Source: Mytilus californianus
Taxonomy: Eukaryota
DNA length: 64,000 bases
Assembly: GCF_021869535.1 (NCBI RefSeq)
Contig: NW_026262712.1
Location: forward strand, 47,368,001-47,432,000
Direction: 5' to 3'
This document shows positions 4,421-28,360 of the stretch, piece by piece. The notes beneath the pieces were generated by a model, which saw only the letters and a list, made by a program, of their open reading frames with translations, was not told where the DNA came from and made no database searches. Made by a program: the position numbers and the translations under genes. Position 1 is the first letter of the stretch. Each line of letters starts with the position of its first letter.

Positions 4421-5410
4421 TTAAAAGTTTTAATATAATCTTTTCGAAACCGTTTTTTCATTTTAAAAAAAGACAACATACAAACATATAATATGATGAC
4501 TTATTTCATAAATAATAAATATTAAGTAATTCAGCATTTAAAAAGTTTTGTATCTTGGAAGTTTATTTCAAAAAAAAAAATTAAAAATTACAAGATTATA
4601 ATTTTTAAGAACCAGTGGTTGATTTTAGTTGTTAAATGTTGTATAGACTAATTAATTGAGATCCAAAATATCCCAATTATATACCTTCATGGCGGACGCT
4701 ATATCATTTCAATGTAATGAGGTATCAAAATTTTCAGCCAACTTGAGAAAAAAAAAACCCCAGGATCGTATCAATATTCTGTACACGTTTAAGGTTGATA
4801 ATACTTGAGTTAAAATTTCCAAATACTTACCGCTTTTCTAGTAATAACTCCTCAATCATTCAAAGCTATCCCTATTTCAAATGAATCTTTTCCTGTTTTA
4901 AAGCTGTGTTAAACAAAAAGATTGACACGTAAAATTGGAATGGTCCAAAGAGAATCGTTTGGTGCTCTGAAAAAAATTCTGTTAACAATTTCGAAAATAG
5001 CAATTCGTCAGTAATGGAGACCTATCTAATTTTCCAAAAATGAACCAACTGAAATGTTTAAAAGATGATCAACCAATCTTCTGAAATTTCATTCCATTAT
5101 TTTAATTCATTTGCAGTAATAAATATTCTACAACATATCGACCACAAAGACAAAGGGTCGAATGAAAGATTACAATTATGTATTCTCAATATGATAATAA
5201 TGTACATATTGATGTCAGATTTGTGATCGTCGTTAAATCGTTTTACTACATGATTCGACGCTTGATATTGTCGATTCATTTTTCTATTGGCTAAGAACTT
5301 ATATGTTGACCTCTAAATTAAAGTCGTTTAAGTCGTTGAATTGTTGTCTCAACGGCGTAAAACTTATATTTCTTTTTAGGCATATTTACACAGTTAACTT
5401 AAATGTACTG

Positions 5411-5913
5411 TCATAACATGTCAAGACAAGTAAATGAATAAATGTCTGCTAAAAAAACCAAAAATGATACATACGTTTTTACATCTATTGTGCAATGTAA
5501 AGCATATAACAGTTGTTCCAACCACATTTCTATATCCTTTGTAGCGTCAATACATTTCATATTAGTACGAACAATGGGAAGAGAACATTCCTCCACCATT
5601 ACCACAACCAATTTTTCAATATCTTCGAAATCTCTAATTGTAGTATGCATTCTGCCTGACTTCTCTGAGAAGGTTACAACAACTGGCGTATGCTTCTCAA
5701 TAAATTGAAAGCTGTTTCCCATTTGGAGACCAAGTAAAAAGTCTCTGCCAATAAGTCCACAATTAAGGTTATATATCTTCTCAAGCATATCCACAACTCT
5801 CTCGACCCACGTTCTTTCAATGTCGACATCAAAATTTACGAACACAGCATCAAATGGTCTTGCGGGTAATTTTGGCCTTTGTTTCGAGTTAACATGATAA
5901 ATGTACGACTCTT
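5411..5913 (-). CDS. TIR-domain exon, probable terminal exon of the minus-strand receptor gene
   Basis: Translation FDAVFVNFD..ERTWVERVVDMLEKIYNLNCGLIGRDFLLG...PVVVTFS matches TIR box 1/box 2 (FDAF, RDF.PG). Strong acceptor ttctctttttgcag|AA GAG TCG in phase 1; TGA at 5411-5413. A possible internal donor (AC|GTATGT) lies near 5475. Confidence 0.75.
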
Positions 5914-6490
5914 CTGCAAAAAGAGAATACACTATACAGTGGATTCAACCTTTGTGCAAAAATATTCGACATAGTTTGTCTACGCTTAACTACAAAAAAA
6001 AAATCCGAAACAATGACACATCAACGAAGATCGCAGCAATTATAATAAATATTGTTCAAGATATCCCCTCGTTTTTGGTTGCTTTTCCATGTTTTGGACT
6101 TTCACCGAACGGGAACGCTTTTTATCATTAGAAGACTATAACAACGAACCTTGGTTTATTTTGTAATGGCTTATTGAATCAAGTACATTTCAAACAGTGT
6201 GCTCCATTGTCTTCATGTCTTAAAGAAGAGAGGTTTACGTGTCAAGTCGTATCTTAACGTTCAGACTGCAGGAATTTGAGAAGGTTGACACCACAAGCAA
6301 CTAATTCCGCTAACGGATAATTTGTCGCGACTTCTCGAGTAAATAATGACTAACCTATCAGTCGTCGTGAATAAGTACACTTGTGTACTCTATTATATAA
6401 AGACAATTAAAAATTAAATCGAAATGAAGTGTTTGTAAAAAAAGTTAGTTTACATTAATCTAAAAAAAGGCTGTCCTATAAAACATGTTT
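5914..6490 (-). pseudogene. Decayed signal-peptide/TM segment directly 5' of the TIR exon (TLR-like remnant)
   Basis: IFIIIAAIFVDVSLFRIFF..VVKRRQ is TM-like with a basic stop-transfer, broken by an upstream TGA and a frameshift in a T10 run. 6236-6300 and 6456-6482 align with 11851-11938. Confidence 0.35.
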
Positions 6491-6794
6491 GATGAAAGTT
6501 AAACGGGGAGAAAGTAAATCAAGATTATAAATTAAACGCATAAAACAGGGAGACAAAAGTTGAAATATAGTCGCATAAGTTTACACTCCTATGCAAGCAC
6601 ATTCATTCAGTCGTACAGTGTATGCAAGTTCACTTTTAAGAGTTTTGGCTTTTTATTTGCAATTATACCATTTCGTTTTAATTTCGTGTAAGGACTTACA
6701 TAATTTGTCTTGATGATAAACTATATTTCTAAACACAACTGAAAGTTCAAATAAATCAGCAGTAGATAATCGAACCATGTTGAAAGCATATTGA

Positions 6795-7445
6795 TAATGC
6801 TCTCCAACTTCGTTCTTTATCTGGCCTTTTTTAAAACGTTTTTGATTCGAGCGTAACTGATGAGTCTTTTGTAAACGAAACGCGCGTCTGGCGTACACAA
6901 GTTTAATCCTGGTATGTATGAGTTTATTAACAACCACTGGGTCGATACGACTACTGGTGGACGTTTCCTCCTTGAGAGTTAAACCAGCCCAGTAGTCAGC
7001 ACTTCTGTGTTGACATGCATCATCATTGATATGGTCATTATTATAAATTACCTGTTCACAAAACTTTGAATATTTCGAAATACTAAGGATTTTCTACCCT
7101 AGGAATAGATTACCATAGCTATTAGGCAAAGCCTTTATGTATTTAAGGTCCTGAATGCCATTCAACTTCGTACTTTTTTGGCCTTTTTATTTTCTTTTAT
7201 TTACAATCACAAATGTTAACAAAACTAAGATCTTGGATACTAGTGATTTGCGACCAAGGAATAGATTACCTCACCTATTTTTGCCAAAACCTTTCGGAAT
7301 TTTGTGTTTTAGATGCTCTTCATATTCGTTCTTTGTTTGACCTTGTTAAATATTTTGATAAGAGCATCAATGATGAGTCTTTGAAGACAGTACGTGCGTC
7401 TGGCGTACAAAATGTTAATCCTGGTATCTATGATGAGTTTGTTAA
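6795..7445 (+). repeat. Head-to-tail copies of a dispersed non-autonomous repeat family
   Basis: Core ...CTGATGAGTCTTTTGTAAACGAAACGCGCGTCTGGCGTAC...AATCCTGGTAT occurs twice here and again at about 42835-43120 (-), 44350-44490, 51780-51865 and 52525-52630 (-). Confidence 0.65.
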
Positions 7446-7664
7446 TATTTCTTTATGCTAAAATAGAATGGGTGTTATATATCTTGCCAACTACATAAAT
7501 GTAAGTGTATTGTAGGCCCATTTCCTTACGTCGTGGGGGTATTTATACATCTGTAGCTTTCGAAGGGTTTGGTTTGAGCGTTCTGATGAAGCTGAATCTG
7601 CCAAAACGCTTAAATGGTTTCATTCAGCATATCCAATTCATTAGAGAATTATTATAAAAATTAC

Positions 7665-7757
7665 CTTCTGGTAGCTGTAAAATTTCATTAGCTTGTGTAC
7701 TTTCCTCTCTGATAACGTTCTCCACCACATGATTATTCATTTGAAGAGCTAACTCGT
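7665..7757 (-). CDS. 93-nt cassette exon copy 1 (DELALQMNNHVVENVIREESTQANEILQLPE)
   Basis: ttgtag|AC...GAAG|gtaatt; phase 1-1; no stop; paralogous to four other copies. Confidence 0.7.
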
Positions 7758-8141
7758 CTACAATTGTAAAGTTGTAATTTTGAATTAACTGGTTGTTGCA
7801 ATGAATCGATATCATAATTGAATAATATGTTTCGATGAGTGATAATCATCATTCAAACTTGAAGAGGATCTGAAAAGTAACGAAGTTGCGATTTTGGCGA
7901 AAAATTAAAGGGATTTTTATACAAACCCCACAATAAAAAAATGATCCCTCCTTTCAGAATTTCGAGCCATCATATTACGGACGGGACAAAAACATTTTAT
8001 CAACCCCAACGTCGTTGCTTAGGGTGTGCCTAAACTATTTATCAATAAGCTGAACAAACCACATTATTTTGAAGCTATTATTGGAAATCAAGAAAATAAA
8101 AGTGAAACAAACAAAGGCTCAAAATCTGTAAACATATTTAC

Positions 8142-8234
8142 CCTCTGATTTCTGTACAATTTCATTAGCGTGAGTACTTTCCTCTTTGATAACGTATTTT
8201 TCACCCTGACTATTCCTATGAGGAGCTAATTCGT
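8142..8234 (-). CDS. 93-nt cassette exon copy 2 (DELAPHRNSQGEKYVIKEESTHANEIVQKSE)
   Basis: tttatag|AC...GAGG|gtaaat; phase 1-1; no stop. Confidence 0.7.
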
Positions 8235-9417
8235 CTATAAATGTAAAATTGTGATTGTGAATTAACTGTTCATAGCAATTTATCAATATCATAACTGTTT
8301 TTTTTTTATAGAAAAAAAACCCCCACTTTTTGATTAAATGTCTCGATGTCATCATCATTCAAACTAGAAGATGATCTGTAAAATAGATAAGTTACTATTT
8401 CGTCGAAGAAAAGGGATATGTATTGAAACCCCACAATCGAAAATATCGCGTTTCGAAAACTTATGTCTAATTAGAGATGCTCGAGTCCAAAATTTTTGAA
8501 AACCGAAACCTTAAAGAAACGTTGCAGAGCTACTATTATAAATAAGACCAAACATATTGCCATACCCGGACAAGAAATCAAAGCTATTTACAAGGGAGAA
8601 ACATTCCGCAATTGAAAATGATTTCCTTAGTGACAACAGCACATTTCAATTGACCATATCTTTGTATTCATGTCATTTATTTTCATCCTCGATTTTGATG
8701 AGTGAAAACTTCATTGAAAATTGAAGAGAATTTGATAAAAAATAAAGGAACTATCAAAATGACTAGAATGCACATGGGATATTGTAACAAGTCCCTCTTC
8801 CTTAATAAATACCCCCAAGCAAAAGGGTCCACCTTTTAACATTTATTTTGTTATGGAATTCATTCAATGTTTTGCTTGATGAGGGGACACCTTTTTACAT
8901 ATTTGAAGAAGGTCTCAGAAAAAATGAAAGCTCAGTTGGCAACAAGAACTAATATGCGATATTTATACCCTCCCACCAATGTATCTCATTCAGATTTTCC
9001 GGTTCATCAAACTCCCACATAGTTTAGGTCAGTTGAAATTTTCATTCAAATTGGATGAGGATAAATAAAAAATGAAAACTTTTCAAGGCGACAAGAATTA
9101 ATAAAGAATACTTTAACAAGTCTCCCTCCTCAAAAATTGTTGGTTTTGCTGGGTGGAAACCTTAATTCCAATTTTAACAGGATCTGGCAATTAATAAAGG
9201 CGCTAGCATGGCAGAAAAAAAGATGAAGAATGACTTAATGATCGAATAGACTTAAGAACGGAACAGCAACTATTACATACCACAACGTCGTTACTTAGCG
9301 TGTAACTAAACTATTCATCTAAGAGCTCAACAAACCACATTGTTTTGAAATTTATTACTGGAGATCAAGAAATTAAAAGTGAAACATACAAATGCTCAAC
9401 ATTTGTTAGCATATTAC

Positions 9418-9510
9418 CCTCTGATTTCTGGTCAATTCCATTAGCTTGTGTACTTTCCTCTCCGATAACGTGTTTTTCTCCATGATTATTCATTTGAAGA
9501 GCTATTTCGT
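9418..9510 (-). CDS. 93-nt cassette exon copy 3 (DEIALQMNNHGEKHVIGEESTQANGIDQKSE)
   Basis: attgcag|AC...GAGG|gtaata; phase 1-1; no stop; too short for the ORF track. Confidence 0.7.
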
Positions 9511-10398
9511 CTGCAATTGTAAAATGTAATTATAAATTAAAGGTTAAAAGCAACTAATCAATATCATAACTAAGATTTATTGATATGGAATTCTAAAATA
9601 ATATAAGTTTTAGATGTTTCGAAGAGTGGATATCATTAAAACTTGAAGATGATCTGAAAAGAAGTTTAGTTACTATTTAGTCTAAAACAAGGGGTATTTA
9701 TACAAACCCCACAATTGAAAAACAAATGGTCCATGATTTCAGATTTTTTGGATTATCGAGTCATCGCATTAAACGGTATTCATTTTACCACTTCAGATAC
9801 ACGGCTTGAAAATGTATGTCTCATCGGAGATGCTCAAGACCACAATTTTGAAAACCAAATCTTATAGAAACGTTATAGAGGTGATGTTATTAAAACGGAT
9901 CAAAAGTATTACCAAATTCTGAACAAGAAATCAAAGCTACACATGAGGGAGATACATCCCTTGTTGCAAATGATTTCTTTAGTTTGCAAATTGCAATAAA
10001 ACAATACCCTTATATTTATTTTTAACCACGGCTTTTATGAGTGGAAACTGCATTGAAAGTTGAGGAGTATTTGATAAAATGAGACAAGAATGTATATGTA
10101 TATGGATTTCCGTGTTATTAAAAAACTCTTCCGTGACTTCGGTAAGTGGAAATTTTCGTTCAATTTGATAAGTATATAAAAACAGAATGACAATCGGATG
10201 GACACCGGACGGACAGAAAACATTTTACCAACCACACTGTCGTTGCTTGGGATTTAACTATATCATTAATCAATTAATTCAACATACCACCTTATTTCAT
10301 CTTGCAATATATAATCAATTTCAAATATACAGACTAGATTGAAAGCAAAGAAATGAAAGTAAAACAATTTAAGGCTCAACATTTGTAAAAATATTTAC

Positions 10399-10491
10399 CT
10401 TCTGATTTCTGTATAATATCATTAGCTTGAGTACTTTCTTTCCCTATAATGTATTTAACTCCCTGATTGTTTATTTGAGGAGCTAATTCTT
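10399..10491 (-). CDS. 93-nt cassette exon copy 4 (EELAPQINNQGVKYIIGKESTQANDIIQKSE)
   Basis: attacag|AA...GAAG|gtaaat; phase 1-1; no stop. Confidence 0.7.
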
Positions 10492-10799
10492 CTGTAATTG
10501 TGAAATTAAAATTGTTTATAACAACTTATCAATGATATAACTGATTTATTTTTCTTATATGGACTTCTAAAAAGACCCATGGGTCAGATGTTTCGATGTA
10601 TGGAAATCATCATTTAAACTTGAAGAGGATTTAAAAAATAGTTCAGTTGCAATTTTGGCGAACAAAAGGGATATTTACTCATACCCAATAATCGTAAAAC
10701 ATTACCCCACATTTCAAACATAACATCCAATGGATTTAGTGTAAAGACGTCATTAACAGCTTATTAAACGGTTTAGGAAAAAGAATGATTTCTTTAGCA

Positions 10800-11940
10800 A
10801 ACGTTCTTCTTATAAAAATTTACATTCCTTACCAGGATAAAATTAATAAACATGTTGTAAAAATGTAAATGTGTAACAAAAGTGGATCTTATATTCATTA
10901 TTCATTTATTGCTTCATAAGCCTCAATCGCAATTTATGGCCAAAATAAAACAGACCATTCGAGCTTTGCTTTATTAAAAAAGCTTAGTGACAACTACGAT
11001 TATCTTTGTGATACAGTTTCCTTTGAATATTATTAAATCTGTTTTTTAGCACTTGTGTAGGTTTGAAGTTACTTGGGATTCTTGTGAAGGAAAGTGGAAA
11101 ATCAAAACGACCAACTTTGTTTTTGGCTGTCAAATTCGATTATCTTATTGATATTATCTGTTGAATATTGCAGTTATCACATATATATGATAAGCAAACA
11201 CATACTCAAGGATATTGACTTAATACGTGTACCCTTTCGTACTTGAGTAATTTTAGGAAACAGAAGTTTAAAATATATAAATCTATTAAGATGATACAAA
11301 TTAAGATCACAAACAAAAGCTGGTTAAAACATGAACCCCCAAAGGAAAGAGACCAATTGTGTCGACAGCGTAAGCGTCCAATGATATGCATGCAACATCC
11401 GCCACGCGATACACTCTTAAGTTGAAATGTCAGAATCGAAGTAATTACAGATGATACGACTGTTGGTATTGAGAATGTCTCAATATTGAGTACATTGGTA
11501 CATAAATAACCCATTATCAGTATTTGCCTTTTAGACGATTTCACATTGTTAAGTAGCTCAGTTATGACATAATGGTTCCTTGTACTTTTCTTACTTAAAT
11601 GTTGACATTGTGAAATTATCAAGTAAATGACGTCTGAGGTGCAGTGATTGGTATTGTAGTCAATGGTTGAAGATTATAGTAGATCATCTATGTTACTTGG
11701 TGTTCGTATAATCCTTAAATGAAAGCCGGCATTTAAGGGGTCGGTATTCCGTTTTCAATGTACTTTCTGAAGATAATGTTGACTTAAGTAACTGTCCAAT
11801 GGGTTGATTCAGTATGTTCTGATGGCTTAATGTCATACACCGGCGAAAGCTACGTGTCAAAACATATTCTCAGTGCTTGAATTCAGGAATTTGAGAACGC
11901 CGACACTACAAAGAATCTATAAAAGGCTGTCCTGTAACGC
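10800..11940 (-). pseudogene. Decayed TLR-like remnant (signal peptide, LRR-like, TM, possible TIR traces)
   Basis: LRR N-cap-like YNLQPLTTIPITAPQT; LRR-like stretch and TM LLFVILICIILIDLYIL in ORF 11206-11622; KIIVVVTKLF resembles TIR betaC. Many stops and frameshifts. DNA homology to 6236-6482. Confidence 0.3.
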
Positions 11941-12330
11941 CAATTTAGAAAAAAAAGATATTTCGGGTACACATTACATTTCAATCAGCTACTTAAAGCA
12001 TAAAATGGGATGACAATGTATTATTATATTCACTGCAATACATGCTCCTATAAAAGCACTCTTGGTGAATCGTAAAGAGTGTAAATATGTCCTTTCTTTG
12101 TTTTTTAGTTTGTACTCTCAACATACCTGAATATGTTTCTGTTTTGTGTGTAAGGACAATTATCGTTTGTATTTCTTAAATGAATTTAGATTTCGAAGAT
12201 ATTATCAAACCTGTTGCAGTCATTTTATGTATCTTTATGCTTACAAAATACAACTATGGAGGTTGTACATCTGGCCGAATCTGTTTGTGTTTTCATCATA
12301 TATTCATGATGGATTTAAGAAAATATTTAC

Positions 12331-12423
12331 CTTCTGATTCTTGTACAATTTTGTTAGTCTGATCATTTTCCATTCCGATAACGTGCTTCTCGACCTGAGT
12401 ATGAATTTCTGGACCCGTCGCAA
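12331..12423 (-). CDS. 93-nt cassette exon copy 5, most divergent (VATGPEIHTQVEKHVIGMENDQTNKIVQESE)
   Basis: gttacag|TT...GAAG|gtaaat; phase 1-1; no stop. Confidence 0.65.
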
Positions 12424-13179
12424 CTGTAACAGTTAAATTGTAATTATAAATGAACTATTCATAGTAACTCATCAATATTAAGATCGCTACTTTTGGATAG
12501 CTTTGGTCTTTTTAAATTTTCAGACACGTTTTTTGTCATAGATGTTGTATTTGAGCCACAAAGTCAAATACATTGATTTCATCTTGTTTCGAGAAAACAT
12601 GAATTGACATATTACAAGTCTGTCATTTCTTAACTTAGAACAGTCCCAAATTTTTCATTAAAATACAGAACTTTACTTCTCTGAGTTATCATAATACTTA
12701 ATTAAACTTCTGTAAATCACAAAAAGACTTGTTTATGTCTCAGATCTAGGTTCCAGAGGTGTCTGATCACAAAATAACCGACCTATAAATATAATTCTAT
12801 TTATTTATTTATGATCACCATACATTGTAACTTTGATACTATTTTTTTAAAGATGAATTAAATTATTTCGTTTTATCTCCTGGTTGAGTTTTGTGACAGA
12901 ATTACTCTGAATTTCAGGCTTTAAATATGAATACTGGTTAATAAGAAAGGAAGAAGTGATTTTTTTTGTATATTGTTCTAGTATGTTAAACTATATTTGC
13001 AGTTGGGAACTATTTGCAAATTAAAGTAATTTTCGAATGCACATAAAAACCCAATACCAACTATACTTGGAAGCTATTTGCAAAGTAATGTCAGAATCAA
13101 GGTGAGAACCAAATATCACCTATTCCTCGAAACTACAGGAACGTACTGTCAGAATCACTATAAGAACCAAAGATAAACA

Positions 13180-13400
13180 ATATTTAATATGGTCTTTTAC
13201 AAGTTAGAGGTTTCGCTAGCTATAAAACCAGGTTTAATCCACCATCTTCTACATAAGGAAATGCCTGTACCAAGCCAGGAATATGACAGTTGTTTTCCAT
13301 TTGTTTTATGTGTTTGAGCTTTTGATTTTGCCATTTGATAAAGGACTTTCCGTTTTGAATTTCCTTGGAGTTCGGTATGTTTGTTATTTTACTTTTTACA
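13180..13400. repeat. Dispersed repeat insertion
   Basis: AAACCAGGTTTAATCCACCAT...AAATGCCTGTACCAAG..AGGAATATGACAGTTG, recognised as a common interspersed family; partial similarity at about 3860-3900. Confidence 0.5.
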
Positions 13401-13637
13401 ACACTCGAAGATATTTTGAAAAAAAAAGAAATGTTATAAAATCTATTAAGAGATGTTTTTAATTATTTTCTTGCTCTCTGTTGTGAATTTTGCTTCATAA
13501 ATATACTGCAATATCTTCATTGATTTAAGAATAATAAGCGGAAGAGAATTGCTTATTTCGGAAGTCATATTAGCACATGTGAGTTGTGTGAAATGCTCTT
13601 GCATGTCCCACATCTGTAACCTCATTCGACAACTGAC

Positions 13638-13709
13638 CATTACGACAACTTGAAACATTTCTATCATTTGGGATTTGTTGTTCATCTTTATGCCAGTCAG
13701 TAGCAGTTT
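13638..13709 (-). CDS. Candidate 72-nt phase 1-1 cytoplasmic exon (ETATDWHKDEQQIPNDRNVSSCRN)
   Basis: actttag|AA...AATG|gtcagt, open frame. It overlaps the TLR-like remnant, so it may be fortuitous. Confidence 0.3.
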
Positions 13710-15726: not shown

Positions 15727-15816
15727 CATTTCAACTTTGTAGACCCTTGCAAGGCTGTTAGATGTTGAAACATATAGGTTTAGCCTCTTCGCGTTTGTGA
15801 AGATCTAACGTCATAT
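15727..15816 (-). pseudogene. Dead duplicate of the 16072-16161 exon
   Basis: Same 90-nt length; MTLDLHKREEAKPICFNI*QPCKGLQS*N versus MKPVLHRQEEATPLCSNISQSREDLQSLK; two stops; acceptor AG lost. Confidence 0.65.
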
Positions 15817-16071
15817 CATCAGCAATAAGTTGAGCATTAACCACTCAATTATAAAACATTTGCCATATTCACAGGAAAACAAACGCTGTATCCGCTTTCC
15901 CACCATGTTAAAGGATTACATTGTAACTGTTTTGTATAATATAGTATCACTTTGTATTTTGTAAATTAGCATAATTAGGACTGATTCTCAGTTGTTTCGT
16001 TGTTTTTTGCAGCACCAATACAGACAAATAATATTATAAACTAAGACATACATTGTTAGCTTTGAATTTAC

Positions 16072-16161
16072 CTTTTAAACTTTGTAGATCTTCTCTAGAC
16101 TGAGAGATGTTGGAACATAACGGTGTAGCCTCTTCTTGCCTGTGAAGAACTGGTTTCATAT
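16072..16161 (-). CDS. Juxtamembrane cytoplasmic exon (MKPVLHRQEEATPLCSNISQSREDLQSLK)
   Basis: ttattgcag|AT...AAAG|gtaaat; 90 nt; phase 1-1. Confidence 0.7.
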
Positions 16162-17614
16162 CTGCAATAAATTGAGAATAAACAACTAATTTTGTACGAC
16201 ATGTGTTATATTTGCAGAAAATAACCCAAAGATTGTTTTCGCTTTTCCACCTTGATAACAATAGCTGTTTTATATAATTTGATACTGTAACGCTTCGTAT
16301 TAAACAATGCCACCCATATTTGAAAATTGGCATTTTAACACTTACACAGATAGCTAGTATTTTTTTAATTACCTTTTATCATATTTATGCCTTGTCCTAA
16401 CAAAATTCTAAAATCTATTGGTAAATATTAACGTAACGAATATCATCACTTCCACAACGCCATAGCGTTGATATACAAAGAAAGATTTGATTATTTAGCA
16501 GATCGTTTGTTTCTTTTTTCCAACGAAGCTAGTTAAATTACTCTATGTGTAGCAGTGAAGAAATTAAGTATTATCAAGAAAACGTCAAACATTGTTTCCT
16601 GCATTTCAACTGTTTTGATAATAGAGTTTAGGACGGCATAAGTTTATGTAATGTTTTTTTTTTAGAAAAATCCCCGAAACGGCCAAATGTGAAACACTTC
16701 AAGAGAGAAAAACAACGGCCTGATTTACAATGTATTCAAAAATAATAACCGAAAAACAAATATAGTCGATAGCAACCAACGACAACCACTAGATAACAGG
16801 TTTTGTGTAAGTACAAAACTAATGTGGTGGGGATAAACATGTTAGTAAATGCTCAATCATGTGCTTTTGCCTAAGTCAAGAACATTGTAAGATGTTGTCT
16901 TTTATTTGTGCTATTTCTTATTAGATTTATTCACAACATTTTTTTAAGACACCCGTAGACCTACAGCTTGCAACTGTATACAAAAACTATATTTCAGAAG
17001 AGGCTGTATGTATATCTCTATACGCCTTCTGATCCTTTTGTCGTTGTGATTCTGTCTGGTTGATATACACCCACGTTTCTATTTAAGTTAATTACCATCG
17101 TAAGTTTTCCGTTGAACTTTTAAGTGACGTCCATTGTACATGTTTTGAAAATATCAGATAATTCGAGGAAAAAAACCCGAATTGCTTAATTTTTATAAAA
17201 CCATATTTTATATCATGAACGATGTAGTTAATAGCAAAGAAGCAATATAATATATTATGTTAACAGGACGAAAGAAACCGATTTTCATTTGATTAAAACA
17301 AATCAACATATTGACCGTTTTTTTAATGTTTGGATTGAAATGTTAAGATTTGAGCAGTCCTGAAGGTAAATGCTAAACACCGCTTCGTATGCATATAATT
17401 CATAAAGTGTAATTGTCATATACTTGTTTCAATCACATTTGTTGTCACTTGAATCTTTAAATGTGGAAAACTAAAGATGAGTAAATGGTGTTTTGCTTCT
17501 TTCTCAATTTCGAAGTGCATAAAACAATTAACTCGAAAGGATGTTCATGAATTGGAGATGCATTTTCTTTTTTCACAAATTAAATATAAAAATTATGATA
17601 ATGATATTTCTTAC

Positions 17615-17704
17615 TGTGCTTGGTCCTTGATTTCTTGCACACAACAATCACTGCAACCACAGTTATAAAAACTATCACAAGTAGACAAATTCCTATCAAC
17701 GGTC
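17615..17704 (-). CDS. Transmembrane exon (GPLIGICLLVIVFITVVAVIVVCKKSRTKH)
   Basis: tttttgttttccag|GA...CACA|gtaaga; 90 nt; phase 1-1; ~21 hydrophobic residues followed by KKSRTK. Confidence 0.8.
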
Positions 17705-19737
17705 CTGGAAAACAAAAAACATATTCACAGAATACCGTGTATGCAGGTTTTAGATAAGTATGGACTAGCAACTTTATCAAACTTTATTATGATGGAAACG
17801 CATCAAATCAAACAAATAACATAAATTAAAAAGTAAAACAAGATGACACAACATATTTTAATAAAGAAATAATGGATTTCTTATGTCCGATATTACTTTC
17901 AAAGCAGAACAGGTAAAACCAATGCTGTAAAAGATTATGTGATACTGATATTAGTTTTATAACGGAAGGATTAAGAGTACCTACATTAGAAACGATAATT
18001 TAATTGCACAATTTGTCCATGTGAATTGTAGTTTAGAAGACTACACTAAGAACACTTTCGAAAAGGAAAGATTCTCATTTATTAAAGAAGATGTGGTATG
18101 ATTGCCAAAAGTCATAGTGAGGCCTTCAACAAGGAACAAAAATTCTCATCTCACTGCAAGTTTAAGATGGCCATTAACGCCGGTTTGAGCAGAATTCATT
18201 GCAAACTGACGATCACTACACAAATGTGAATTGAAGATGTAACCCATGGAGTAATATCAATAAAATGAATCTGGTAAAGAAATCAAACATTGACTGTTAT
18301 AATTTAGCCCGACAATCACAATGAAGCGTGCAAAAACAATACGAGCATTAAGACAACCACGGGGAACATCGATATATATATGTGTTAGATAACTAGGAAG
18401 GAAATAAAGTATGTATAGGAAAATAATCAGGGTAGACTTTGTAAGTTGTAACACCATTAGCTCGGGCCCGGTTAAAAAAAACATACCGGAAAGTAGTACA
18501 TATTTAAAACAAATAGTTCCTACGCATAGATGTAGATATCAAACTATAAGAATATGTATTGGTCGTTTATCAATAAAAGTAACATTATAATGGAAAGCTG
18601 GAATACTTTACTTTTTTTTAATTTCAAGGGCTAAATACTGACTCTGATCATATCTTATCATTTAATATGAAATTATCGTTTACTATCCGTCGTTTGTAAT
18701 ATATATATAATGTTTTCATGATAACGGATACAATGCCACGACGAATGAGTTCTGAAAATGATGCCATTATGAAACAAACCATAAAGGTTACCAGTTCGAA
18801 TGTTAATGTCGTAGCATAAATGAGTATTGCTAACATCAATGAAAGAGAGATTCTAGAAAACAAAAAGGGAAAAACATTACTTTAAAAAATAAGGAGGTGA
18901 GGTGTGAAATGCAAATGAGATATCTATCCACAAAAAACTAAGGAACAATGACAACTACATGTTATCGTATGACATTCATCAATGTGCAAACTACATACTG
19001 TAAAGTTAGCGATACAATATGCCGGAATATAACAAAATATGAAACAAAAGAAAATCACTGTCTGAATTAAACTAATGATAATATTGAATTAAATGCAATC
19101 ACTATGGTAATAAGTTATGATCAACAGCAACTTGACTACAGGTTCCTTAACAATTCGTTTAAACACTCAATCATAACACTTATCTGGGACAATGTGTAAC
19201 AGTACAACATTATATCACATAATAAAAACAATTGACAAGAGTGCGACTAAACTGACTGGTACTGAACATAAAACACATTTAACAAAATGACAAAAGACAC
19301 ATATAGCCAATTTAAGAGAACTCGGGGTTACTCAAAAAAAGTTTTAGTCCTATCTTAACTAATAAATTGACCATGTTTTCTTTGATGAAAATACGAATAA
19401 GAAAATCTCCATTGGTAAGGCGTTATCAATAGTTTCAGAAAAGCACACCTCTGTGAAATGCAAAATATATGTATCGACATAATGCCAAGTCATATGTGTT
19501 TATGAATGTATATCAACATCAGTTTATAAATTAGTACGTATCAAATGATTGATAAAAAAAAAGAAACTAATACAATGTGAAATTGATCATTTTAAATAAA
19601 TCTGTTCTTATGGACAATAGGTTAACATCAATCATATCATAATCAAAGAGCTGTATAAACAACATATTTGTTATAATAAGGATGCTTTGTCCGTTTGTAG
19701 CAAAAAAAGGCAGCTACAAAATAAGTTATTTGACAAC

Positions 19738-19791
<54 letters not shown>
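19738..19791. repeat. (GTA)18 microsatellite
   Basis: Perfect trinucleotide run read directly. Confidence 0.95.
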
Positions 19792-21351
19792 ATCGAAAGC
19801 AATTTTGAAAAGAATATACAGCAACAATTCATGATTAAGATCATTTAAAAGTTTGTTGCAATTATGAATGTTAAATATTTGATAACGGATGAATATGGAC
19901 AATTGGTGGTGACAGAGACTTTCGTTTCTGTATGAAATGACTAAGATTTAACACAAGCAGCCACACTATTTTCGAAAATCCTCATCAAAGTTTGAAACGT
20001 TTGTAAAAAAGAAAGATAACACTTAAGTTATTTAATGCTTCCGAAGAAGCGATTTTCTGGAATAACCTTCATATGGAAAGCTCAATGCCGAATATTTGAA
20101 AGTCAAGGATGTATAAGATCCGAAACAGTACAAAAAATCTGTATGACCAAATAAGGACCTAAAAATAATAGCCAAATCCATGAAAGTTTAACTTTGCCTG
20201 AGAGAGATGAAACCTCAGTTTTTTAAAATATTTTCTAAATCTATAAATGGACAATATTAGAATAGTTTGTTATAAAGCATGTCAGTACTAGGCTTATGAA
20301 GAGTTTAGTTGAAATACTGCGTTGCAGCACATTTTACTTACAGCTGACAAACATGAAAAAAAGGACAAGAAAATGTTTATCAAAGATGTATTTTTTTTTC
20401 GTCTAAATTTGCCTAAACTATTCAAAGGTGGACTAGTTTAGTATGTTTGACAGCACAGTTCCTGATCACAGCTAGATCGCAGATGCTTTAGACAACCAAC
20501 CGGCAAACTTCGTTTTTATGCTAGACAGACATGATTATGGGAGTTTTTAACGACCTTGAATGGCTATACATCCCTAGACAGACAAACCAATCAGGAAACG
20601 TAGAATTAAGGTAACATGAATCATATTTACCCAAATGGCTTTGTCATGTAATCAGGTACAAAATTAGTTATACAATCATGTGAAATAAAAGATAATTTAC
20701 AATCATAAAACATGACGTATATCAAACAATCGAAAAACAACAATATGAACCTAAATTTAAATCACTCTGGTGTACATTTAGGCTTCAGAAATGTGAGTTA
20801 AGAATTGCATCTTTGAATTGCAGATACTAGGAAACATTTTACTATTATGTGACGAAACGATGATGACAGAAAAGTAAAGTAACTTCAATCTAGACGGAGT
20901 TCACTTTGGCTAACATAATATCAGCAAGCTTTTAAGTTCAGATCTTTAATACCGAGAAATATACAGTTTGCACGATGCAAAATGCTATCTAGGGCAGAAT
21001 GGTAGTATTTAATAATAAAATAGTGATTTTGATCACAATTTACATTTGAGTACAACATGTAGAATGTGATATAAGGATAAATCTATGAGAAAAGACCCAT
21101 CCCCGTTTTTCAGTTAAATAACTCTGACTTACACTTGAGAGATACAGGTTAAACCCTCAGACACTGACTATGCATACGCTTGTAAACGTTATTTACATGT
21201 ATGAATCGATACTTAGGTTCATTACTGCCTCATACTTAACGTTTACATTTCATTCATCAGTTTAATGTACCGCCCATAGCGTTGATATTCTAATATGCAC
21301 CATAATTCACATATGTGTAACTTTAAATTCATAAAACATTTTTGAGTCTAC

Positions 21352-21441
21352 CTGTAAAATCTTTTCCAGCATAGTCTTTTGTCTTATTACTATTTTCAGA
21401 TGAATTCTTCTTATTTGTTTTTGTTTCTTTAGAGTGAACGT
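21352..21441 (-). CDS. Extracellular stalk exon (DVHSKETKTNKKNSSENSNKTKDYAGKDFT)
   Basis: ttccattattag|AC...ACAG|gtagac; 90 nt; phase 1-1; polar with NSS and NKT sequons. Confidence 0.65.
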
Positions 21442-22454
21442 CTAATAATGGAAAAAAAATTACATCAATGAATTACACCAGATGCAAATAAAACATGATC
21501 GATTTGAAACCGTAATTATCATCACAATAATATGCGACAAATTGCTCGTTCATAGGTAGTGTATACACACACAGAAATATATTGATTTTTTTTGTATTGG
21601 TAACGATACAGAAATTTGAAGGTAAATTAAGGAAGAATGCCATGTTGAACTTGAAGCAAATAACGATATTCCGAGACGTGATTGATTGCTCTCCTTTCAA
21701 GTTTAGTAACACTTTTGTCGTAGTTACTTGAAAGCACTTTGTTGTTTGTTAATATCCGTTAAAGCATGTAATTACTTTTGCTTAACACTGGTAACCTAAA
21801 ATCAATAATTTATCAACCAATTAAGTATGGCATTTAAAATTTTATCGATGGTACCTAGCATTTACAAATTTGGCTTCTTAACCGTGGTTTTAGGCCTTAT
21901 AGGTTACTGATATTACAAACACATATTATGTGGATTGCTTTAAATTTAACTTTTATTCAGTTTAGTAATTTCTAAATTTTTACCTTTGTTTACTGTTTAA
22001 TTGTTCATTCAGGAGACAGAGCTAAGTTCATATATTCAGAAACTCTAGTAATCTTACTTGAAAACCTACGGTTAAATAAGGCGTAAATGTGTATATTTTT
22101 GACCGGAAAATTGCTTTTATTAAAAGACGACACTTTAGTATTTTTCCAACTATATTTTTGATTCTGTGTTATTTAAGTTGCTCTGATTGGTATCCCGATA
22201 TCGGTATTATTATTATATATATCGTTCATATTTCAATATTTCCATACTATTTAGCCTTGTTTATGTTAAATTGAACTTGATTCGTTTTGTTCATTTGATA
22301 CAAAGATGCAATATTTGAAAAACATCATGTCACCATTTTAGTTCAGAAGATAAAGATTTTACCTCCATATGTTAATTGAAATTTGAGACCGAAGAAAACC
22401 CAGAGAAGAACGGACCCTTGTTGACTCTCTTTCTTAACGAAACTTGTTTCTTAC

Positions 22455-22745
22455 CTGTTCCATCGTAAAATAAGGTTGCATATTTTGAAAACCATGACGT
22501 TACAGTTCTGTCCACAAACATCATATCGCATGAAAAATTTACAGTTTCTCTGGTATTTTTTAGATGAAATGAACGGGAAAACTCGTTTCCAGATGGACTA
22601 CATGAGCAAATTTCAGGATTGCACTCTCCTGCTTGATGTGTACATTTGCCTGTTGTAGAATTCAGCGTTAAGCTGTCTTCTGATCTATCATTGATAAGGA
22701 ACTCAACATTCTTTCCATAAGGTGCTCTACAGGCAAAACATCTCA
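22455..22745 (-). CDS. Ectodomain exon D2, Cys-rich Ig-like/beta domain
   Basis: gtcacag|TG AGA TGT...ACAG|gtaaga; 291 nt; phase 1-1; VRCFACRAPYGKNVEFLIN...CNPEICSCSP...NFSCDM; 7 Cys; NST and NFS sequons. Confidence 0.85.
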
Positions 22746-24779
22746 CTGTGACTTTAGAAATATTAACCTCGCCTGTGATATATATATCTGTAGATCCTAT
22801 AAAACCTATAAAACAGGTAAAGTGAGATATTTATAAGGAATACAGAATAAGTGATGGTACCCCAGTGATATAATCTCATTTGTCCCTTTAAACAGATACA
22901 ATAATTCCTACATCTTTTTCATCACACGGAGGCAAAACATTACGATATTAAAGACAATACAATAGTCTTAGTTTATATCTATCATCAGACCACAAAGACG
23001 AAAGGACAAAGTGCATGATTACTTTTGTTTTCATATTCTAGTAAATCATTATTATTATTATTATTTACAGTGCTTATATAGCGCTTATCTTAATAAACAT
23101 TTAAAAATCATCGTCCCGTTTTGTTAGAAATATACACATGTGTGTAGCGTATACGCATCACAGTTGGAAAGCTTCAAAAGAAACAAACTGCTGTCAACTG
23201 CAGAAACTTAATCGAAAAAAAACAATCGTTTTCGATATTTGATTGCCATTCTACAAAGCTATTACATAATGATTTAAAAAGAGACAAATATGTGAAGAGC
23301 ATGGTAAAAAAAAACCATGTCAACGTACTGATTCTTGGTATCAATTTAGTCTTAAAAGTTATCAATTAAACACTGCAGTAAGATCTTAAACGGTTATTTC
23401 ATTAATTTTTTTTATGAAATAAATATGAATTGCGAACTGCTGGAAACACTTATGATATTTTATCCTTTTCTCAGAATGTTTATGACCTTTTTACACTTAA
23501 ACTGTGGCATGTGTACTGATTGATATTCTAGTCGAATAAAACATGATTTATGAATAAGTTGTAATAGGCTTTAAACTAGCTTTCAGTTACTGGAAACAAT
23601 TTAAGAACGGTTCGGTGCGTCATTTGCTTTTTGGTAGTTGTTTTTGTTTGTGAGTGGTTGTTGTCTGACGAGGCACGCTCTTTATACCTGCTTTTTACAG
23701 GTTGTGCTTTTGATTTTCAAATACACCACTGACCAAGTTTGGGAATGTTGAGCGCTCATAGATATGTTTAATTACATCAACTTAATTGCTTACGTGACCA
23801 AAGCAAGGAGCTTGTAATTCAGTTGTAGTTGTTAGTTGCTGTATGCAATTTTTGTTCCATAGTTTTTAAAAAAATAAGGCCGTTTGTGTTCTAGTTTGAA
23901 ATGACTTACATTTTGATTGCTATACATTATGGGGTCTGCTCTTTGATGAGGACCGCATTGTTACCTTATAGTACATTACATCTACGTCCTTCGGTCTCTG
24001 GAGGATATTTGTCTCATTGAAATCATATTCCATCTTCTTTTTAATTGCTAGTTTGGTTGAGGAATCACATATCCCATACGATATATCTGATGGAACCAAG
24101 TGTTAAAAAGAATCACGAGGAAGTGAAAAGTAAATTTAACTTTTATGACAAAACAATTCAGTAATTTGAACTTAGACAACCAAACGTATAATCAAGTTTC
24201 CCACCAACACAGAATTAAAAAAAAATGTATATACATGTTTCCTATTAGAACCAAGATAATAAGGAACATTTCAAAAACACACTTTCATTTTTTATGTCTA
24301 TCAATTTGAATTTTTTTTTATATCAGCTGGTGATAAAAGTCTTCATAGAAAATACATTTGTTCCAGATTATTCAATCAAATCACTATTTCATAAATAACC
24401 TATATTCTATATAACAGATACCAAAAATGAAAATACCAAATAAAAGTTACCGTTTTATAGCAATCCTCTGTTCAGTTTTTTGTCACACTGCTCACACATT
24501 TTATATTACAAACGTAAAGATAACATAAACAAAATGGTATCAATGCATTTATCAGTAAATATATTCCATATAAATGTTTTCCCTAGAAAAATTTCGTAAG
24601 TGTGACACTTGTCTTTGAATATCAACCAATTTATGATATAACAATCAATATCTTCTTCATATAGCAGAAGTTGATGTGCCAATAACAGAATAACAACTGT
24701 GATGATTTAAATATCATAGCTACCACACAATGTTTTTGATGTCAGAAATCTGACACGTATTCATCCTCGAGATACTAAA

Positions 24780-25330
24780 ATGACATAGAAGTTTACAACT
24801 ATAGGTCACCATACGGCCTTCAAAAATGAGTAAAACCCATACCGCACAGTCAGCTATAAAAGTCCCCGAACTAAGAAATGTGAAACAATTCAAACGAAAA
24901 AATAACGGCCTGATTTATGTACAAAACAATGTACGAAAAACAAATATGATATACAGACTTAATCGACAACCACTGAGTAAAAGGCTCCTGACTTGGGACA
25001 GGCACATACAGAATGTGGCGGGGATAAACTAGTTTTTTTGGCGCAAAACCCTCCCCCAAACCTTGGACAGTGGTGTAACAGTACAACATAAGAACTATAA
25101 AAATAAGTTGAAAAAGGCTGAACTCATCAGACCGATACAAAGAAGAAAAACATCTAACAAAAACACAGACCGCACGTGGCAGGGTATTTATACATCCCAC
25201 AACAAAAAAGAAACTAAGTACAGATCTAGGAGTACTCACAGTTACTGACAGCTATTTCATAGCCATTTACAACTAATAAAAAAATCATGCATCTAAGACT
25301 TAAATATCAATCAGTACACATCCAACATCC
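24780..25330 (+). repeat. Dispersed repeat (ACAACTATAGGTCACC..ACGGCCTTCAA..ATGAG family)
   Basis: Same core as 33050-33240 and 35920-36200; inverted relatives at about 23700-24040 and 36300-36440. Confidence 0.65.
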
Positions 25331-25379
25331 AATTTTTCAAATGTTGTGTTCATCTTTGTAATCGATATAACTGAGTTTG

Positions 25380-25720
25380 TTTACGGATTGGTTTGTTTGT
25401 AGGCATGTCAACTGTGTCTGCTGTTCCTGTGTGCGCTCGATGTTGTACCTAAATACTCGTTCAAAACAAAAACACTAATATCCTTTGTACAACATGTTGC
25501 ATCCTGTCGATTGTGAATGCAATCTCTTTATATTGATGTTTTTTTCATATTTGGATACCTTGAGGTTTTTTGGTTTTATTCACACTCCGGCTAGACTTAT
25601 TTTGTTTTTAGCCGATGAGAGGAATTGTTGCAAACAGTATCTTATCTCAGGCTTTAATAGGGTTTTGTGCTTGTTATTGTTGTAAAAACGGTGGAGTACG
25701 GGCATGTAAGATTCCTATGC
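25380..25720 (-). pseudogene. Possible decayed duplicate of ectodomain exon D1
   Basis: With a frameshift, NINI-KEIAFTID resembles D1 NINRNEIIFTIED; RNLTC upstream; multiple stops. Confidence 0.25.
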
Positions 25721-26538
25721 TTTAAGCAGTCTATCTCCTTTTCTTCTCTTGATATGTTATAACATAAATTATGCTTACTACCCTGATAGCCGTGAATATC
25801 ATATCACATGATTTATAAATACAATAGATAAGAGGAAGAGGTAATCGGTAGGTTTTTAGGTCTCATTGTGTCTGCACTTTCGAAAGTTTGTCCGTACGTT
25901 AATTCTCTTAAGCTAATCACCGTAGTAACTAGTAGTTTATAACTCTCCTTATCTAAATCAAAATTAAACATCCGTTATTGTTTCAATTTGACCTAAAACA
26001 TTCCAAGAGCTAATAGCTAAACTTTGACCTTGTCATTTCCGCAAACGTAGGACGGAGCATTTTAAAACAGGCTACCAAATGACTTTTTTTTATTAATAAA
26101 AACGTTCACATATAGTGAATCATTGATACATGATACAATTGTGTACCTCTTTTTTTATTTTTGTTTCTATATCAAAATAAGATAAAAGGTATGCAGCATT
26201 GAATACCAGAAACTCAAAATAAACCATGGGCTGGATTTTAATGATTCTTTCATTGAATTATCTAAAGCCTTAGACGCAATCAACTTATCAACTGATTCCT
26301 TCACCTGACATGTTTGGGGTTTTCCTATAGAAGATCACGGACTTCCATTTCTTAAGTTAACGATTACATGGAATTAAAAAAAGTGTCAACTTTAACAATG
26401 GTAAATGGAAACATCCAAATATTGTTTATCGAGTATACAAAAACATTAACAAATTTAAGTCTTAAATTAAGTTATTACCAATTTATTTACTCTCAATCGC
26501 ATACTACAATACATTATATGTTATCTCTGTTACCTTAC

Positions 26539-26868
26539 CATTTGTTAATGAAACAGTTGTGCTAAATGTCTTGCCTCCTTGTGAAATATACCATGTTCCG
26601 TCCACGTCCTTACTCTTAACGTCTTCTATCGTGAATATGATCTCGTTCCTGTTTATGTTTGGATTGATCACTCCAAACATTGGTATATGGTGACAATGAT
26701 ATGTCGTCTTTTCGAAACTGCACATTGTTTCGTTTCCATTGTTATCTTTTAAAGATACTGGTTTTAAAAAATCATCAGTTCTATAGATTAGATTCAAGTC
26801 ATCTTGAATGACGTCCCAGGTGATGCAGTTGAAAGCAACGGCCTTGCAAACTAACCATGCTAAATAAA
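26539..26868 (-). CDS. Signal-peptide C-terminal part plus ectodomain D1 (Ig-like) exon
   Basis: cactttcag|TT TAT TTA...AATG|gtaagg; 330 nt; phase 1-1; VYLAWLVCKAVAFNCITWDV...EIIFTIEDVKSKDVDGTWY; no stop; NET sequon. Confidence 0.8.
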
Positions 26869-26889
26869 CTGAAAGTGTGGTAAAGTGGT

Positions 26890-27235: not shown

Positions 27236-27247
27236 ACACATATCAAC

Positions 27248-28349: not shown

Positions 28350-28360
28350 GCTTATGTTAG

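What the first reader, a model, noticed from the sequence alone, without database searches (positions are those of the whole stretch)
5411..26868. Hidden ~21-kb type-I receptor gene: two Ig-like/Cys-rich domains, stalk, TM, repeat tail, TIR
Seen: exons 26539-26868, 22455-22745, 21352-21441, 17615-17704, 16072-16161, (13638-13709), five 93-nt exons and 5411-5913 all have GT-AG boundaries in phase 1. They join without a stop into about 640 codons, lacking only a short first exon. N-glycosylation sequons precede the TM and basic residues follow it. Established: Ig-TM-TIR is the IL-1R/TIR receptor architecture, and bivalves have expanded TIR-protein repertoires. Inference: a non-canonical ectodomain plus a long modular linker before the TIR is unusual and may be an undescribed receptor family. 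The TIR link is the least certain junction.
Basis: partly seen in the sequence, partly recalled or inferred. Interest (0 to 1): 0.85.

Follow-up and report, generated by a model that had tools for sequence, protein, structure and literature searches.

The report
Mussel Ig-TIR membrane receptor gene
This is a real, expressed mussel (Mytilus californianus) gene for a cell-surface protein with two antibody-like outer domains, a membrane anchor, a repeated acidic spacer and a stripped-down Toll/IL-1-receptor signalling domain. It is already in RefSeq as an uncharacterised protein, so it is a lineage-specific member of a known receptor type, not a hidden gene.

Summary
Thirteen minus-strand exons (CDS 34106 to 4852) reproduce, exon by exon, the 649-aa RefSeq protein [quoted passage not shown]. 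There are five corrections:
- 13638-13709 is not an exon.
- The D2 exon starts at 22805, not 22745.
- The TIR exon ends at a donor at 5475, not at 5411.
- A 52-nt last exon (4852-4903) was missed.
- The missing first exon is 34064-34106, beyond a retrotransposon remnant in intron 1.

The ectodomain folds with confidence (pLDDT 94) as two Ig V-like domains. The C-terminal domain gets no Pfam hit, but it is a TIR homologue (hhalign 97.9%, E 3.5e-13). It lacks the alpha-C "WCxxE" segment and the BB-loop proline.

Relatives in other Mytilus have 2 or 3 cassettes instead of 5. The Ig pair belongs to a family of at least 30 exon copies in this genome, and only this member has the TIR.

Verdict: a new member of the known Ig-TM-TIR receptor kind. 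Function is untested and interest is moderate.

The parts
34064..34106 (-). Exon 1: ATG plus 14 codons and 1 base, the N-terminal part of the signal peptide (MIFERSIPILILFS)
   Evidence: Matches P0013 residues 1-14 exactly. Donor A|GTAAGT. 11 of 14 residues are identical to the start of the M. coruscus protein P0002.
26869..34063 (-). Intron 1 (7.2 kb). It holds a Ty3/gypsy-type retrotransposon remnant on the opposite strand (ORF pieces 27170-32620).
   Evidence: ORFs. Pfam finds a PNMA/gag-like domain, RVT_1 (6e-35), and Integrase_H2C2 plus rve. No direct repeats of 80 nt or more were found.
26539..26868 (-). Exon 2: end of the signal peptide plus Ig V-like domain D1. In this orthologue group the canonical B-F cysteine pair is replaced (LIYR, WYIS).
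   Evidence: P0013 residues 15-124. AF2 pLDDT 94. V-set matches at Z 10.9 to 9 over model residues 1-101. Paralogue exons keep LICR and WTC.
22455..22805 (-). Exon 3: interdomain strand plus Ig V-like domain D2, with a Cys-rich insert (C179, C186, C191, C193).
   Evidence: P0013 residues 125-241. Acceptor TTTTATAG|. C147 and C217 lie on the predicted B and F strands. ICOS V-set_2 and PVRIG Ig models align to residues 110-220 and 76-222.
21352..21441 (-). Exon 4: 30-aa K/N/S/T-rich stalk with two sequons
   Evidence: P0013 residues 242-271. Sequons N254 and N260.
17615..17704 (-). Exon 5: transmembrane helix plus the basic stop-transfer stretch KKSRTKH
   Evidence: P0013 residues 272-301. Kyte-Doolittle peak of 3.45 at residues 274-292.
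16072..16161 (-). Exon 6: juxtamembrane cytoplasmic segment
   Evidence: P0013 residues 302-331.
15734..15817 (-). Decayed duplicate of exon 6, with an in-frame stop. It is not in the RefSeq protein.
   Evidence: 75% nucleotide identity to 16070-16162 (family D7). tblastn shows the stop.
12331..12423 (-). Cassette exon c1 (93 nt, phase 1-1), the most divergent copy
   Evidence: P0013 residues 332-362. The loose end of the RNA contig behind 10492 reads into 12331 onward.
10399..10491 (-). Cassette exon c2
   Evidence: P0013 residues 363-393. Joined to c3 in RNA contigs X2 and X3.
9418..9510 (-). Cassette exon c3
   Evidence: P0013 residues 394-424. Joints 9510/10399 and 8234/9418 appear in the contigs.
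8142..8234 (-). Cassette exon c4
   Evidence: P0013 residues 425-455. Joint 7757/8142 appears in the contigs and in 2 raw RNA reads.
7665..7757 (-). Cassette exon c5
   Evidence: P0013 residues 456-486. Joint 5913/7665 appears in the contigs and in 2 raw RNA reads.
5475..5913 (-). Exon 12: divergent TIR domain. It has box 1 FDAVFVNF, box 2 GRDFLLG and box 3 MW, and lacks the alpha-C WCxxE segment.
   Evidence: P0013 residues 487-632. The RNA contigs leave the genome at 5475, where the donor is GTATGT. TIR homology.
4852..4903 (-). Exon 13, coding part: the last 17 residues plus the stop
   Evidence: The 30-nt loose end of the contig maps uniquely to 4874-4903. Acceptor AACACAG| and stop at 4852-4854. 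P0013 residues 633-649.
   Evidence: X3 contig 13 carries 615 nt beyond 5475.

Best explanation
**What it is (shown).** The locus is the annotated, transcribed gene LOC127706385 of Mytilus californianus. It has 13 exons and encodes a 649-aa type-I membrane protein. In order, the protein has:
- a signal peptide;
- two Ig V-like domains, D1 without the canonical disulfide and D2 with it plus a Cys-rich insert;
- a glycosylated stalk;
- one TM helix;
- an acidic cytoplasmic spacer of about 185 aa, which includes five tandemly duplicated 31-aa cassette exons;
- a divergent TIR domain.

**How it most likely works (inferred).** It is an IL-1R/IG-TIR-style surface receptor. A ligand bound by the Ig pair would cluster receptor chains. 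This would bring the TIR-derived domains together as a docking scaffold for cytosolic TIR adaptors of the MyD88 type. The flexible acidic spacer would set the reach of the TIR from the membrane. The domain lacks the alpha-C segment with the conserved Glu, so it is not expected to be an NAD-cleaving TIR.
For: - **Gene model.** Every exon translates to consecutive residues of P0013. All borders are AG/GT.
- **Transcription and splicing.** Contigs X2 (1518 nt) and X3 (2480 nt) join 10399-10492, 9418-9510, 8142-8234, 7665-7757 and 5475-5913. Raw RNA reads of X15 show two of these joints. X15 covers the exons only with first mates on +, which means RNA from the minus strand. The genome has no second copy of the TIR exon, so the spliced contigs do not come from a retrocopy.
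- **Ig domains.** pLDDT 94 and pTM 0.86. More than 500 Foldseek hits to Ig V pairs. D1 matches VH, nectin-2 D1 and CD8 at Z 10-10.9. A two-Ig I-set cluster reaches TM 0.50 over residues 3-222, and ICOS and PVRIG align on D2.
- **TIR.** phmmer hits to proteins that Pfam calls TIR_2, at E 1.7e-7 and 3.5e-5 in 1.84 billion sequences. hhalign gives 97.9%, E 3.5e-13, over 128 columns. The family profile hits canonical TIR exons of this genome at 3e-11 to 1e-7. The best PDB hits are the TIRs of IL1RAPL2, IL1RAPL1 and IL-1RAcP, with best E 0.0033. ESM features point to TIR clusters.
- **Topology.** Six sequons lie before the TM segment and a basic stretch follows it.
- **Conservation.** The same architecture is found in M. 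coruscus (P0002), in two intronless transcript contigs (P0014, P0008) and in a partial M. galloprovincialis model.
Against: - No Pfam model matches any of the three globular domains.
- The TIR lacks about 15 residues where canonical TIRs carry S-x-W-C-x-x-E. It has Leu in place of the BB-loop Pro. In distant members (P0007, P0008) the BB loop itself is deleted. Canonical adaptor docking is therefore not assured.
- No structure model of the TIR part was obtained. The single-sequence AF2 run gave pLDDT 32.
- No ligand, partner, tissue or induction data were seen.
- Junctions upstream of c1 rest on the RefSeq model and on contig length only.
Confidence: 0.55

Rival explanations
1. It is a decoy or negative regulator, working like SIGIRR (the single-Ig IL-1R-related molecule). 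The same protein sits at the membrane, but its degenerate TIR cannot nucleate a signalling complex. Instead it sequesters adaptors or partner receptors and so damps TIR signalling.
For: - The alpha-C WCxxE segment is deleted and the BB-loop Pro is replaced.
- The BB loop is not conserved across the family.
- The TIR part differs much more between species (64% identity to P0002) than the ectodomain does (87-91%).
Against: - Eight positions are invariant across the 10-sequence alignment A1, including both of its distant rows. The E-E-C-S-x-P / M-K-C-x-D-A-T block is kept in most rows. This argues for a constrained surface.
- There is no functional data either way.
Confidence: 0.22
2. It is a cell-adhesion or tissue-organisation receptor, not an immune sensor, as with IL1RAPL1 and IL1RAPL2 at synapses. 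The V-like Ig pair would bind a protein on another cell, and the TIR and the tail would serve as an organiser.
For: - The best solved-structure sequence hits of the TIR profile are IL1RAPL2 and IL1RAPL1.
- D1 resembles nectin-2 and Necl-2 domain 1 as closely as it resembles antibody V domains.
Against: - Those hits are weak (E 0.003 to 0.24) and cover only the box 1 to box 2 region.
- V-set similarity is generic.
- The Ig pair belongs to a large, fast-diverging, tandemly expanded family. That pattern is more typical of immune-type receptors.
Confidence: 0.13
3. It is a decaying or mis-assembled gene model. On this reading, the TIR exon is a remnant of another gene that is only occasionally spliced on, and the protein is not functional.
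For: - There is a retrotransposon remnant in intron 1, a decayed duplicate exon and repeat-rich introns.
- Expression is low: depth is about 4 in the 6% of run X15 that was read.
- Constraint on the cassettes is weak, with pN/pS about 0.5.
Against: - The frame is intact over 649 codons.
- The spliced contigs carry the cassettes and the TIR together.
- Relatives in at least three other sources have the same architecture, including intronless transcript contigs with complete ORFs.
- No TLR-like remnant lies upstream of the TIR exon.
Confidence: 0.05

Closest known systems
IL-1 receptor family (IL-1R1, IL-1RAcP, IL1RAPL1/2, SIGIRR) and the invertebrate 'IG-TIR' class
   Same: - Both are type-I proteins with extracellular Ig-like domains, one TM helix and a cytoplasmic TIR.
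- The best PDB sequence hits of the TIR profile are TIRs of the IL-1R family.
- IG-TIR is listed as a class for oyster, sea urchin and Aplysia (PMC9334734).
   Different: - It has two V-like Ig domains that Pfam does not recognise, whereas most IL-1R family members have three Ig-like domains and SIGIRR has one (from general knowledge).
- D1 lacks the canonical disulfide.
- An acidic repeat spacer of about 185 aa separates the TM helix from the TIR.
- The TIR lacks the alpha-C WCxxE segment and the BB-loop Pro.
- No orthology to vertebrate IL-1Rs was shown.
Toll-like receptors of bivalves
   Same: Both have a single-pass membrane topology with a C-terminal TIR. Both belong to expanded, lineage-specific repertoires in mussels (PMC10279657, from the title and abstract listed).
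   Different: There is no LRR ectodomain and the gene is multi-exonic. No LRR or TLR remnant lies next to the TIR exon.
Neighbouring paralogue LOC127706387 (P0016) and the other D1-D2 genes of this genome
   Same: They share the signal peptide, D1, D2, stalk and TM design. D2 is 53% identical. The genes lie in the same orientation, about 70 kb apart on the same chromosome.
   Different: - The P0016 tail has no TIR.
- P0016 and the genomic paralogue exons keep the canonical D1 cysteines.
- Among at least 30 D2-type exons in the genome, only this gene has a TIR exon of this subfamily nearby.
NAD-cleaving TIR proteins (SARM1, bacterial and plant TIRs)
   Same: TIR homology. ESM features place the domain nearest to bacterial TIR clusters.
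   Different: The segment that carries the conserved Glu is absent, so enzymatic action is unlikely.

Membership tests
IL-1R-like / IG-TIR receptors | Extracellular Ig-like domain(s) | tested here: met
   AF2 pLDDT 94. D1 reaches Z 10.9 to V-set domains. D2 aligns to the ICOS and PVRIG V-type models. A two-Ig I-set cluster gives TM 0.50. Pfam Ig models do not hit.
IL-1R-like / IG-TIR receptors | Signal peptide and a single TM helix, type-I topology | tested here: met
   Hydrophobic peaks occur only at residues 2-30 and 266-299. All six sequons on the N-terminal side of the TM lie in the ectodomain, and KKSRTKH follows the TM. No dedicated predictor was available.
IL-1R-like / IG-TIR receptors | Cytoplasmic TIR domain | tested here: met
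   hhalign 97.9%, E 3.5e-13, to a Pfam-verified TIR_2 domain. phmmer E 1.7e-7 and 3.5e-5 to TIR proteins. Pfam itself gives no hit.
IL-1R-like / IG-TIR receptors | Canonical TIR motifs: box 1, box 2 with the BB-loop Pro, and box 3 | tested here: inconclusive
   Box 1 (FDAVFVNF) and box 3 (MW) are recognisable. Box 2 reads RDFLLG, without Pro. The alpha-C S-x-W-C-x-x-E segment is deleted.
IL-1R-like / IG-TIR receptors | Orthology to vertebrate IL-1R family genes, or signalling through MyD88 and IRAK | not testable with these tools
   There are only weak profile hits to the TIRs of IL1RAPL2, IL1RAPL1 and IL-1RAcP. No tree was built and no interaction data exist.
Toll-like receptors | Leucine-rich-repeat ectodomain | tested here: not met
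   The ectodomain is two Ig-like beta sandwiches. There is no LRR hit in Pfam and none in the DNA upstream of the TIR exon.
Enzymatic (NADase) TIR domains | Conserved catalytic Glu in the alpha-C region | tested here: not met
   In alignment A4 the family has a gap of about 15 residues where canonical TIRs have W-C-x-x-E. hhalign places a His there.
Pfam TIR / TIR_2 | Score above the Pfam gathering threshold | tested here: not met
   No hit at E<=1 for the exon, and no TIR model at E<=0.1 for homologues P0001-P0008.

The most novel reading that the evidence does not exclude
The D1-D2 Ig pair defines a mussel-specific family of paired surface receptors. The family has at least 30 D2-type exons here, with members that share an ectodomain type but carry unrelated tails. 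LOC127706385 is its only TIR-coupled member in this genome. Its alpha-C-less TIR and its cassette spacer, which varies in copy number (2, 3 or 5 repeats between relatives), would form a tunable signalling or decoy arm. That would be a previously undescribed way of wiring Ig-type recognition to TIR pathways in molluscs.
Probability: 0.15. Interest if true: 0.6.

Novelty: new member of a known kind. Interest (0 to 1): 0.35.

Why it matters
Bivalves have very large TIR and receptor repertoires, and most members are named only "uncharacterized".

This gene is a clean, transcript-supported example of an Ig-TM-TIR receptor in which all three globular domains escape Pfam. Domain-based immunome surveys that rely on Pfam-type models would therefore probably miss or misclassify it.

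It also supplies three usable facts:
- a TIR subtype without the alpha-C segment;
- an Ig pair shared with many TIR-less paralogues;
- a cytoplasmic spacer built from duplicated symmetric exons whose number differs between Mytilus relatives.

None of this overturns current ideas. It mainly refines the annotation and gives a candidate for functional work on mussel immunity.

Tried and rejected
1. **Pfam.** Scans of every exon and of homologues and paralogues gave no Ig or TIR hit for this family.
2. **Single-sequence AF2 of the TIR exon.** pLDDT was 32, so the model is unusable. Both fold jobs were then spent, so the TIR part has no model.
3. **phmmer of the TIR exon against PDB.** It gave only a spurious designed helix bundle.
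4. **Downstream exons next to paralogues.** tblastn with our TM, cassette and TIR exons found nothing in 10-20 kb downstream of seven D1-D2 paralogue genes. Short exons may escape such a search.
5. **Exon 13638-13709.** It is open and has AG/GT borders, but it is absent from P0013 and from M. coruscus P0002. Rejected.
All three frames of 5914-6600 are full of stops. Genomic TIR-containing ORFs match only the TIR exon itself. No support.
7. **LTRs around the retroelement in intron 1.** No direct repeat of 80 nt or more was found.
8. **The look-up of encoding contigs for P0002.** The protein is not on record, so the M. coruscus locus could not be compared.
9. A script strung the exons together to compare them with P0013. 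It had an off-by-one error at exon 1 and gave no valid result. I replaced it with the exon-by-exon check.


Full report
**Observation**

Each proposed exon is flanked by AG and GT and is open only in the frame expected for phase 1. A scan of 5.9-16.1 kb recovered the five 93-nt exons at 12331-12423, 10399-10491, 9418-9510, 8142-8234 and 7665-7757. They sit in diverged tandem genomic units of roughly 0.5-1.9 kb that include intron sequence. The window contains no N.

**Identity of the gene**

A HMMER search of the last exon against 1.84 billion representative proteins found a 570-aa protein, P0002, with the whole predicted architecture. A homology search with P0002 then returned P0013. This is 649 aa, named [quoted passage not shown], and lies on a contig of 120,330,192 bases, the same length as the window's contig C132.

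Exons were searched one by one by reference, and for whole-protein work I used the database protein P0013.

An exon-by-exon translation shows that 13 exons give consecutive, gap-free stretches of P0013, residues 1-649:
- 34064-34106
- 26539-26868
- 22455-22805
- 21352-21441
- 17615-17704
- 16072-16161
- the five cassettes
- 5475-5913
- 4852-4903

An earlier script that concatenated exons had an off-by-one error and yielded nothing. No joined sequence left the script.

- 13638-13709 is not an exon.
- The D2 exon begins 60 nt further upstream.
- The TIR exon ends at 5475, not 5411.
- A short last exon was missed.
- The missing first exon lies 7.2 kb upstream of D1.

That upstream intron holds a Ty3/gypsy-type retrotransposon remnant on the other strand, with gag-like, RVT_1 and integrase matches.

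**RNA evidence**

I laid four runs on 4900-10899.
- Two contigs, X2 record 9 (1518 nt) and X3 record 13 (2480 nt), join 10399-10492, 9418-9510, 8142-8234, 7665-7757 and 5475-5913. Every skipped piece is CT..AC on the plus strand, which is GT..AG on the minus strand.
- Raw reads of the RNA-seq run X15 show the joints 5913/7665 and 7757/8142, with two reads each.
- X15 covers the exons only with first mates on the plus strand, as expected for a minus-strand RNA in a stranded library.
- The loose end behind 10492 reads into cassette c1 (compare).
- The loose end before 5475 maps uniquely to 4874-4903. The donor at 5475 is AC|GTATGT and the acceptor before 4903 is ...AACACAG.

The genome holds only one copy of this TIR exon, so the spliced contigs are not a retrocopy.

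They rest on RefSeq, on the homologues, and on contig length: the 1053 nt upstream of 10492 compare with 1044 nt for exons 2-7.

**Ectodomain**

Paralogue searches in the same genome found at least 11 D1-type and at least 21 D2-type exons. With the more distant relative P0008 as query, 30 D2-type and 6 D1-type exons were found on nine contigs, often as adjacent D1-D2 pairs.

An alignment of these with the full-length relatives (A3) gave an AlphaFold model with mean pLDDT 94 and pTM 0.86, all beta.
- Foldseek returned more than 500 matches, all to pairs of Ig V domains.
- VIA-align gave Z 10.9 (rmsd 2.9 A over 95 residues) to Z 9 for D1 against VH, nectin-2 D1, CD8 and TCR V domains.
- The ESM-Atlas shape search aligned a two-Ig I-set cluster over residues 3-222 (TM 0.50). 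It also aligned ICOS (V-set_2) and PVRIG Ig models on D2 alone.
- In D2, C147 and C217 fall on the predicted B and F strands. Four more cysteines form an insert between them.
- In D1 the canonical pair, kept in the genomic paralogue exons, P0008 and P0016 (LICR, WTC), is replaced by LIYR and WYIS in this gene and its close relatives.

Six sequons, the single TM peak and the KKSRTKH stretch fit a type-I topology.

**TIR domain**

Pfam gives no hit, and the single-sequence fold was useless. Five results nevertheless support TIR homology:
- phmmer links the exon to proteins in which Pfam finds TIR_2. P0009, from the freshwater mussel Potamilus streckersoni, scores E 1.7e-7, and P0010 scores E 3.5e-5.
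- The family profile A1 aligns to the P0010 TIR over 128 columns at 97.9% probability, E 3.5e-13.
- The same profile finds canonical TIR exons of this genome at 3e-11 to 1e-7.
- Its best solved-structure hits are the TIRs of IL1RAPL2, IL1RAPL1 and IL-1RAcP, with best E 0.0033.
- Language-model features point to TIR clusters.

Alignment with canonical TIRs shows that box 1, a box 2 without the Pro (RDFLLG), the E-E-C-x-x-P block and the box 3 Trp are kept. A gap of about 15 residues replaces the alpha-C S-x-W-C-x-x-E segment. This is a truncated TIR that is unlikely to be an NADase.

**Spacer**

The stretch of 185 residues between the TM helix and the TIR has net charge -20. The five cassettes are 74-84% identical at the nucleotide level among c2-c5, against 64-80% for the upstream intron flanks. 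Pooled pN/pS is about 0.5, which indicates weak constraint. Relatives have three cassettes (P0002) or two (P0014). A decayed duplicate of exon 6, with a stop, lies at 15734-15817.

**Family context**

- P0014 and P0008 come from intronless contigs with complete ORFs, which are therefore transcripts. P0008 has D1-D2-TM, a long non-repeat linker and the same TIR subtype.
- The neighbouring paralogue P0016 (LOC127706387) has D1-D2-TM and a tail without a TIR.
- In this genome the profile finds no other TIR exon of this subtype on the chromosome.
- The M. coruscus protein is 87-91% identical in the ectodomain but only 64% identical in the TIR. This hints at exon exchange between paralogues or at non-orthology. 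I could not fetch that locus.

**Interpretation**

Shown:
- a real, spliced, conserved gene for a type-I protein;
- two Ig V-like domains;
- a divergent TIR.

Inferred:
- It acts as an IL-1R/IG-TIR-style receptor. Ligand-driven clustering would let the TIR-derived domain dock adaptors.
- A SIGIRR-like damping role and an adhesion role are the main rivals.

Ig+TIR proteins are an established class in invertebrates (PMC9334734). The gene and its relatives are already in public protein sets, and one of them is labelled as TIR-containing. It is a new, lineage-specific member of a known kind, of moderate interest.

Noticed in passing
window 27170-32620 (+): Remnant of a Ty3/gypsy-type LTR retrotransposon inside intron 1, antisense to the gene. 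It has a gag-like ORF with a CCHC knuckle, RVT_1, and integrase. The ORFs are split into at least four pieces, and no flanking direct repeat of 80 nt or more was found. I only described it.
   Followed up: partly
window 15734-15817 (-): Decayed tandem duplicate of the juxtamembrane exon (75% nucleotide identity to 16070-16162), carrying an in-frame stop. It is not used in RefSeq protein P0013.
   Followed up: partly
window 6700-7100, 7300-7500 and 10700-10899: Very high read and contig depth on both strands in RNA and contig runs, with loose ends on both sides. These are probably pieces of abundant, transcribed repeats lying in the introns. They are not part of the gene.
   Followed up: no
G000:C35:41.34-41.64 Mb (L043-L046): A cluster of four exons encodes a sister subtype of the same alpha-C-less TIR-like domain (E 2e-49 to 2e-22 with profile A1). 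One of them has a TGA inside the match. Their ectodomains were not examined.
   Followed up: no
G000:C132:47204584-47205876 and 47462448-47464222 (outside the window): Two more D1-D2 paralogue genes lie on the same strand, about 163 kb downstream and about 30 kb beyond the window's end. Together with this gene they form a local trio. The second is LOC127706387 (P0016), which has no TIR.
   Followed up: partly
P0002 compared with window exons: The M. coruscus relative is 87-91% identical in D1, D2 and the stalk but only 64% identical in the TIR exon. Its TIR groups with P0004 and P0014, not with the M. californianus type. This may reflect exon exchange between paralogues or presence/absence variation.
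   Followed up: no
window 19738-19791: A perfect (GTA)18 microsatellite in the intron between the stalk exon and the TM exon.
   Followed up: no
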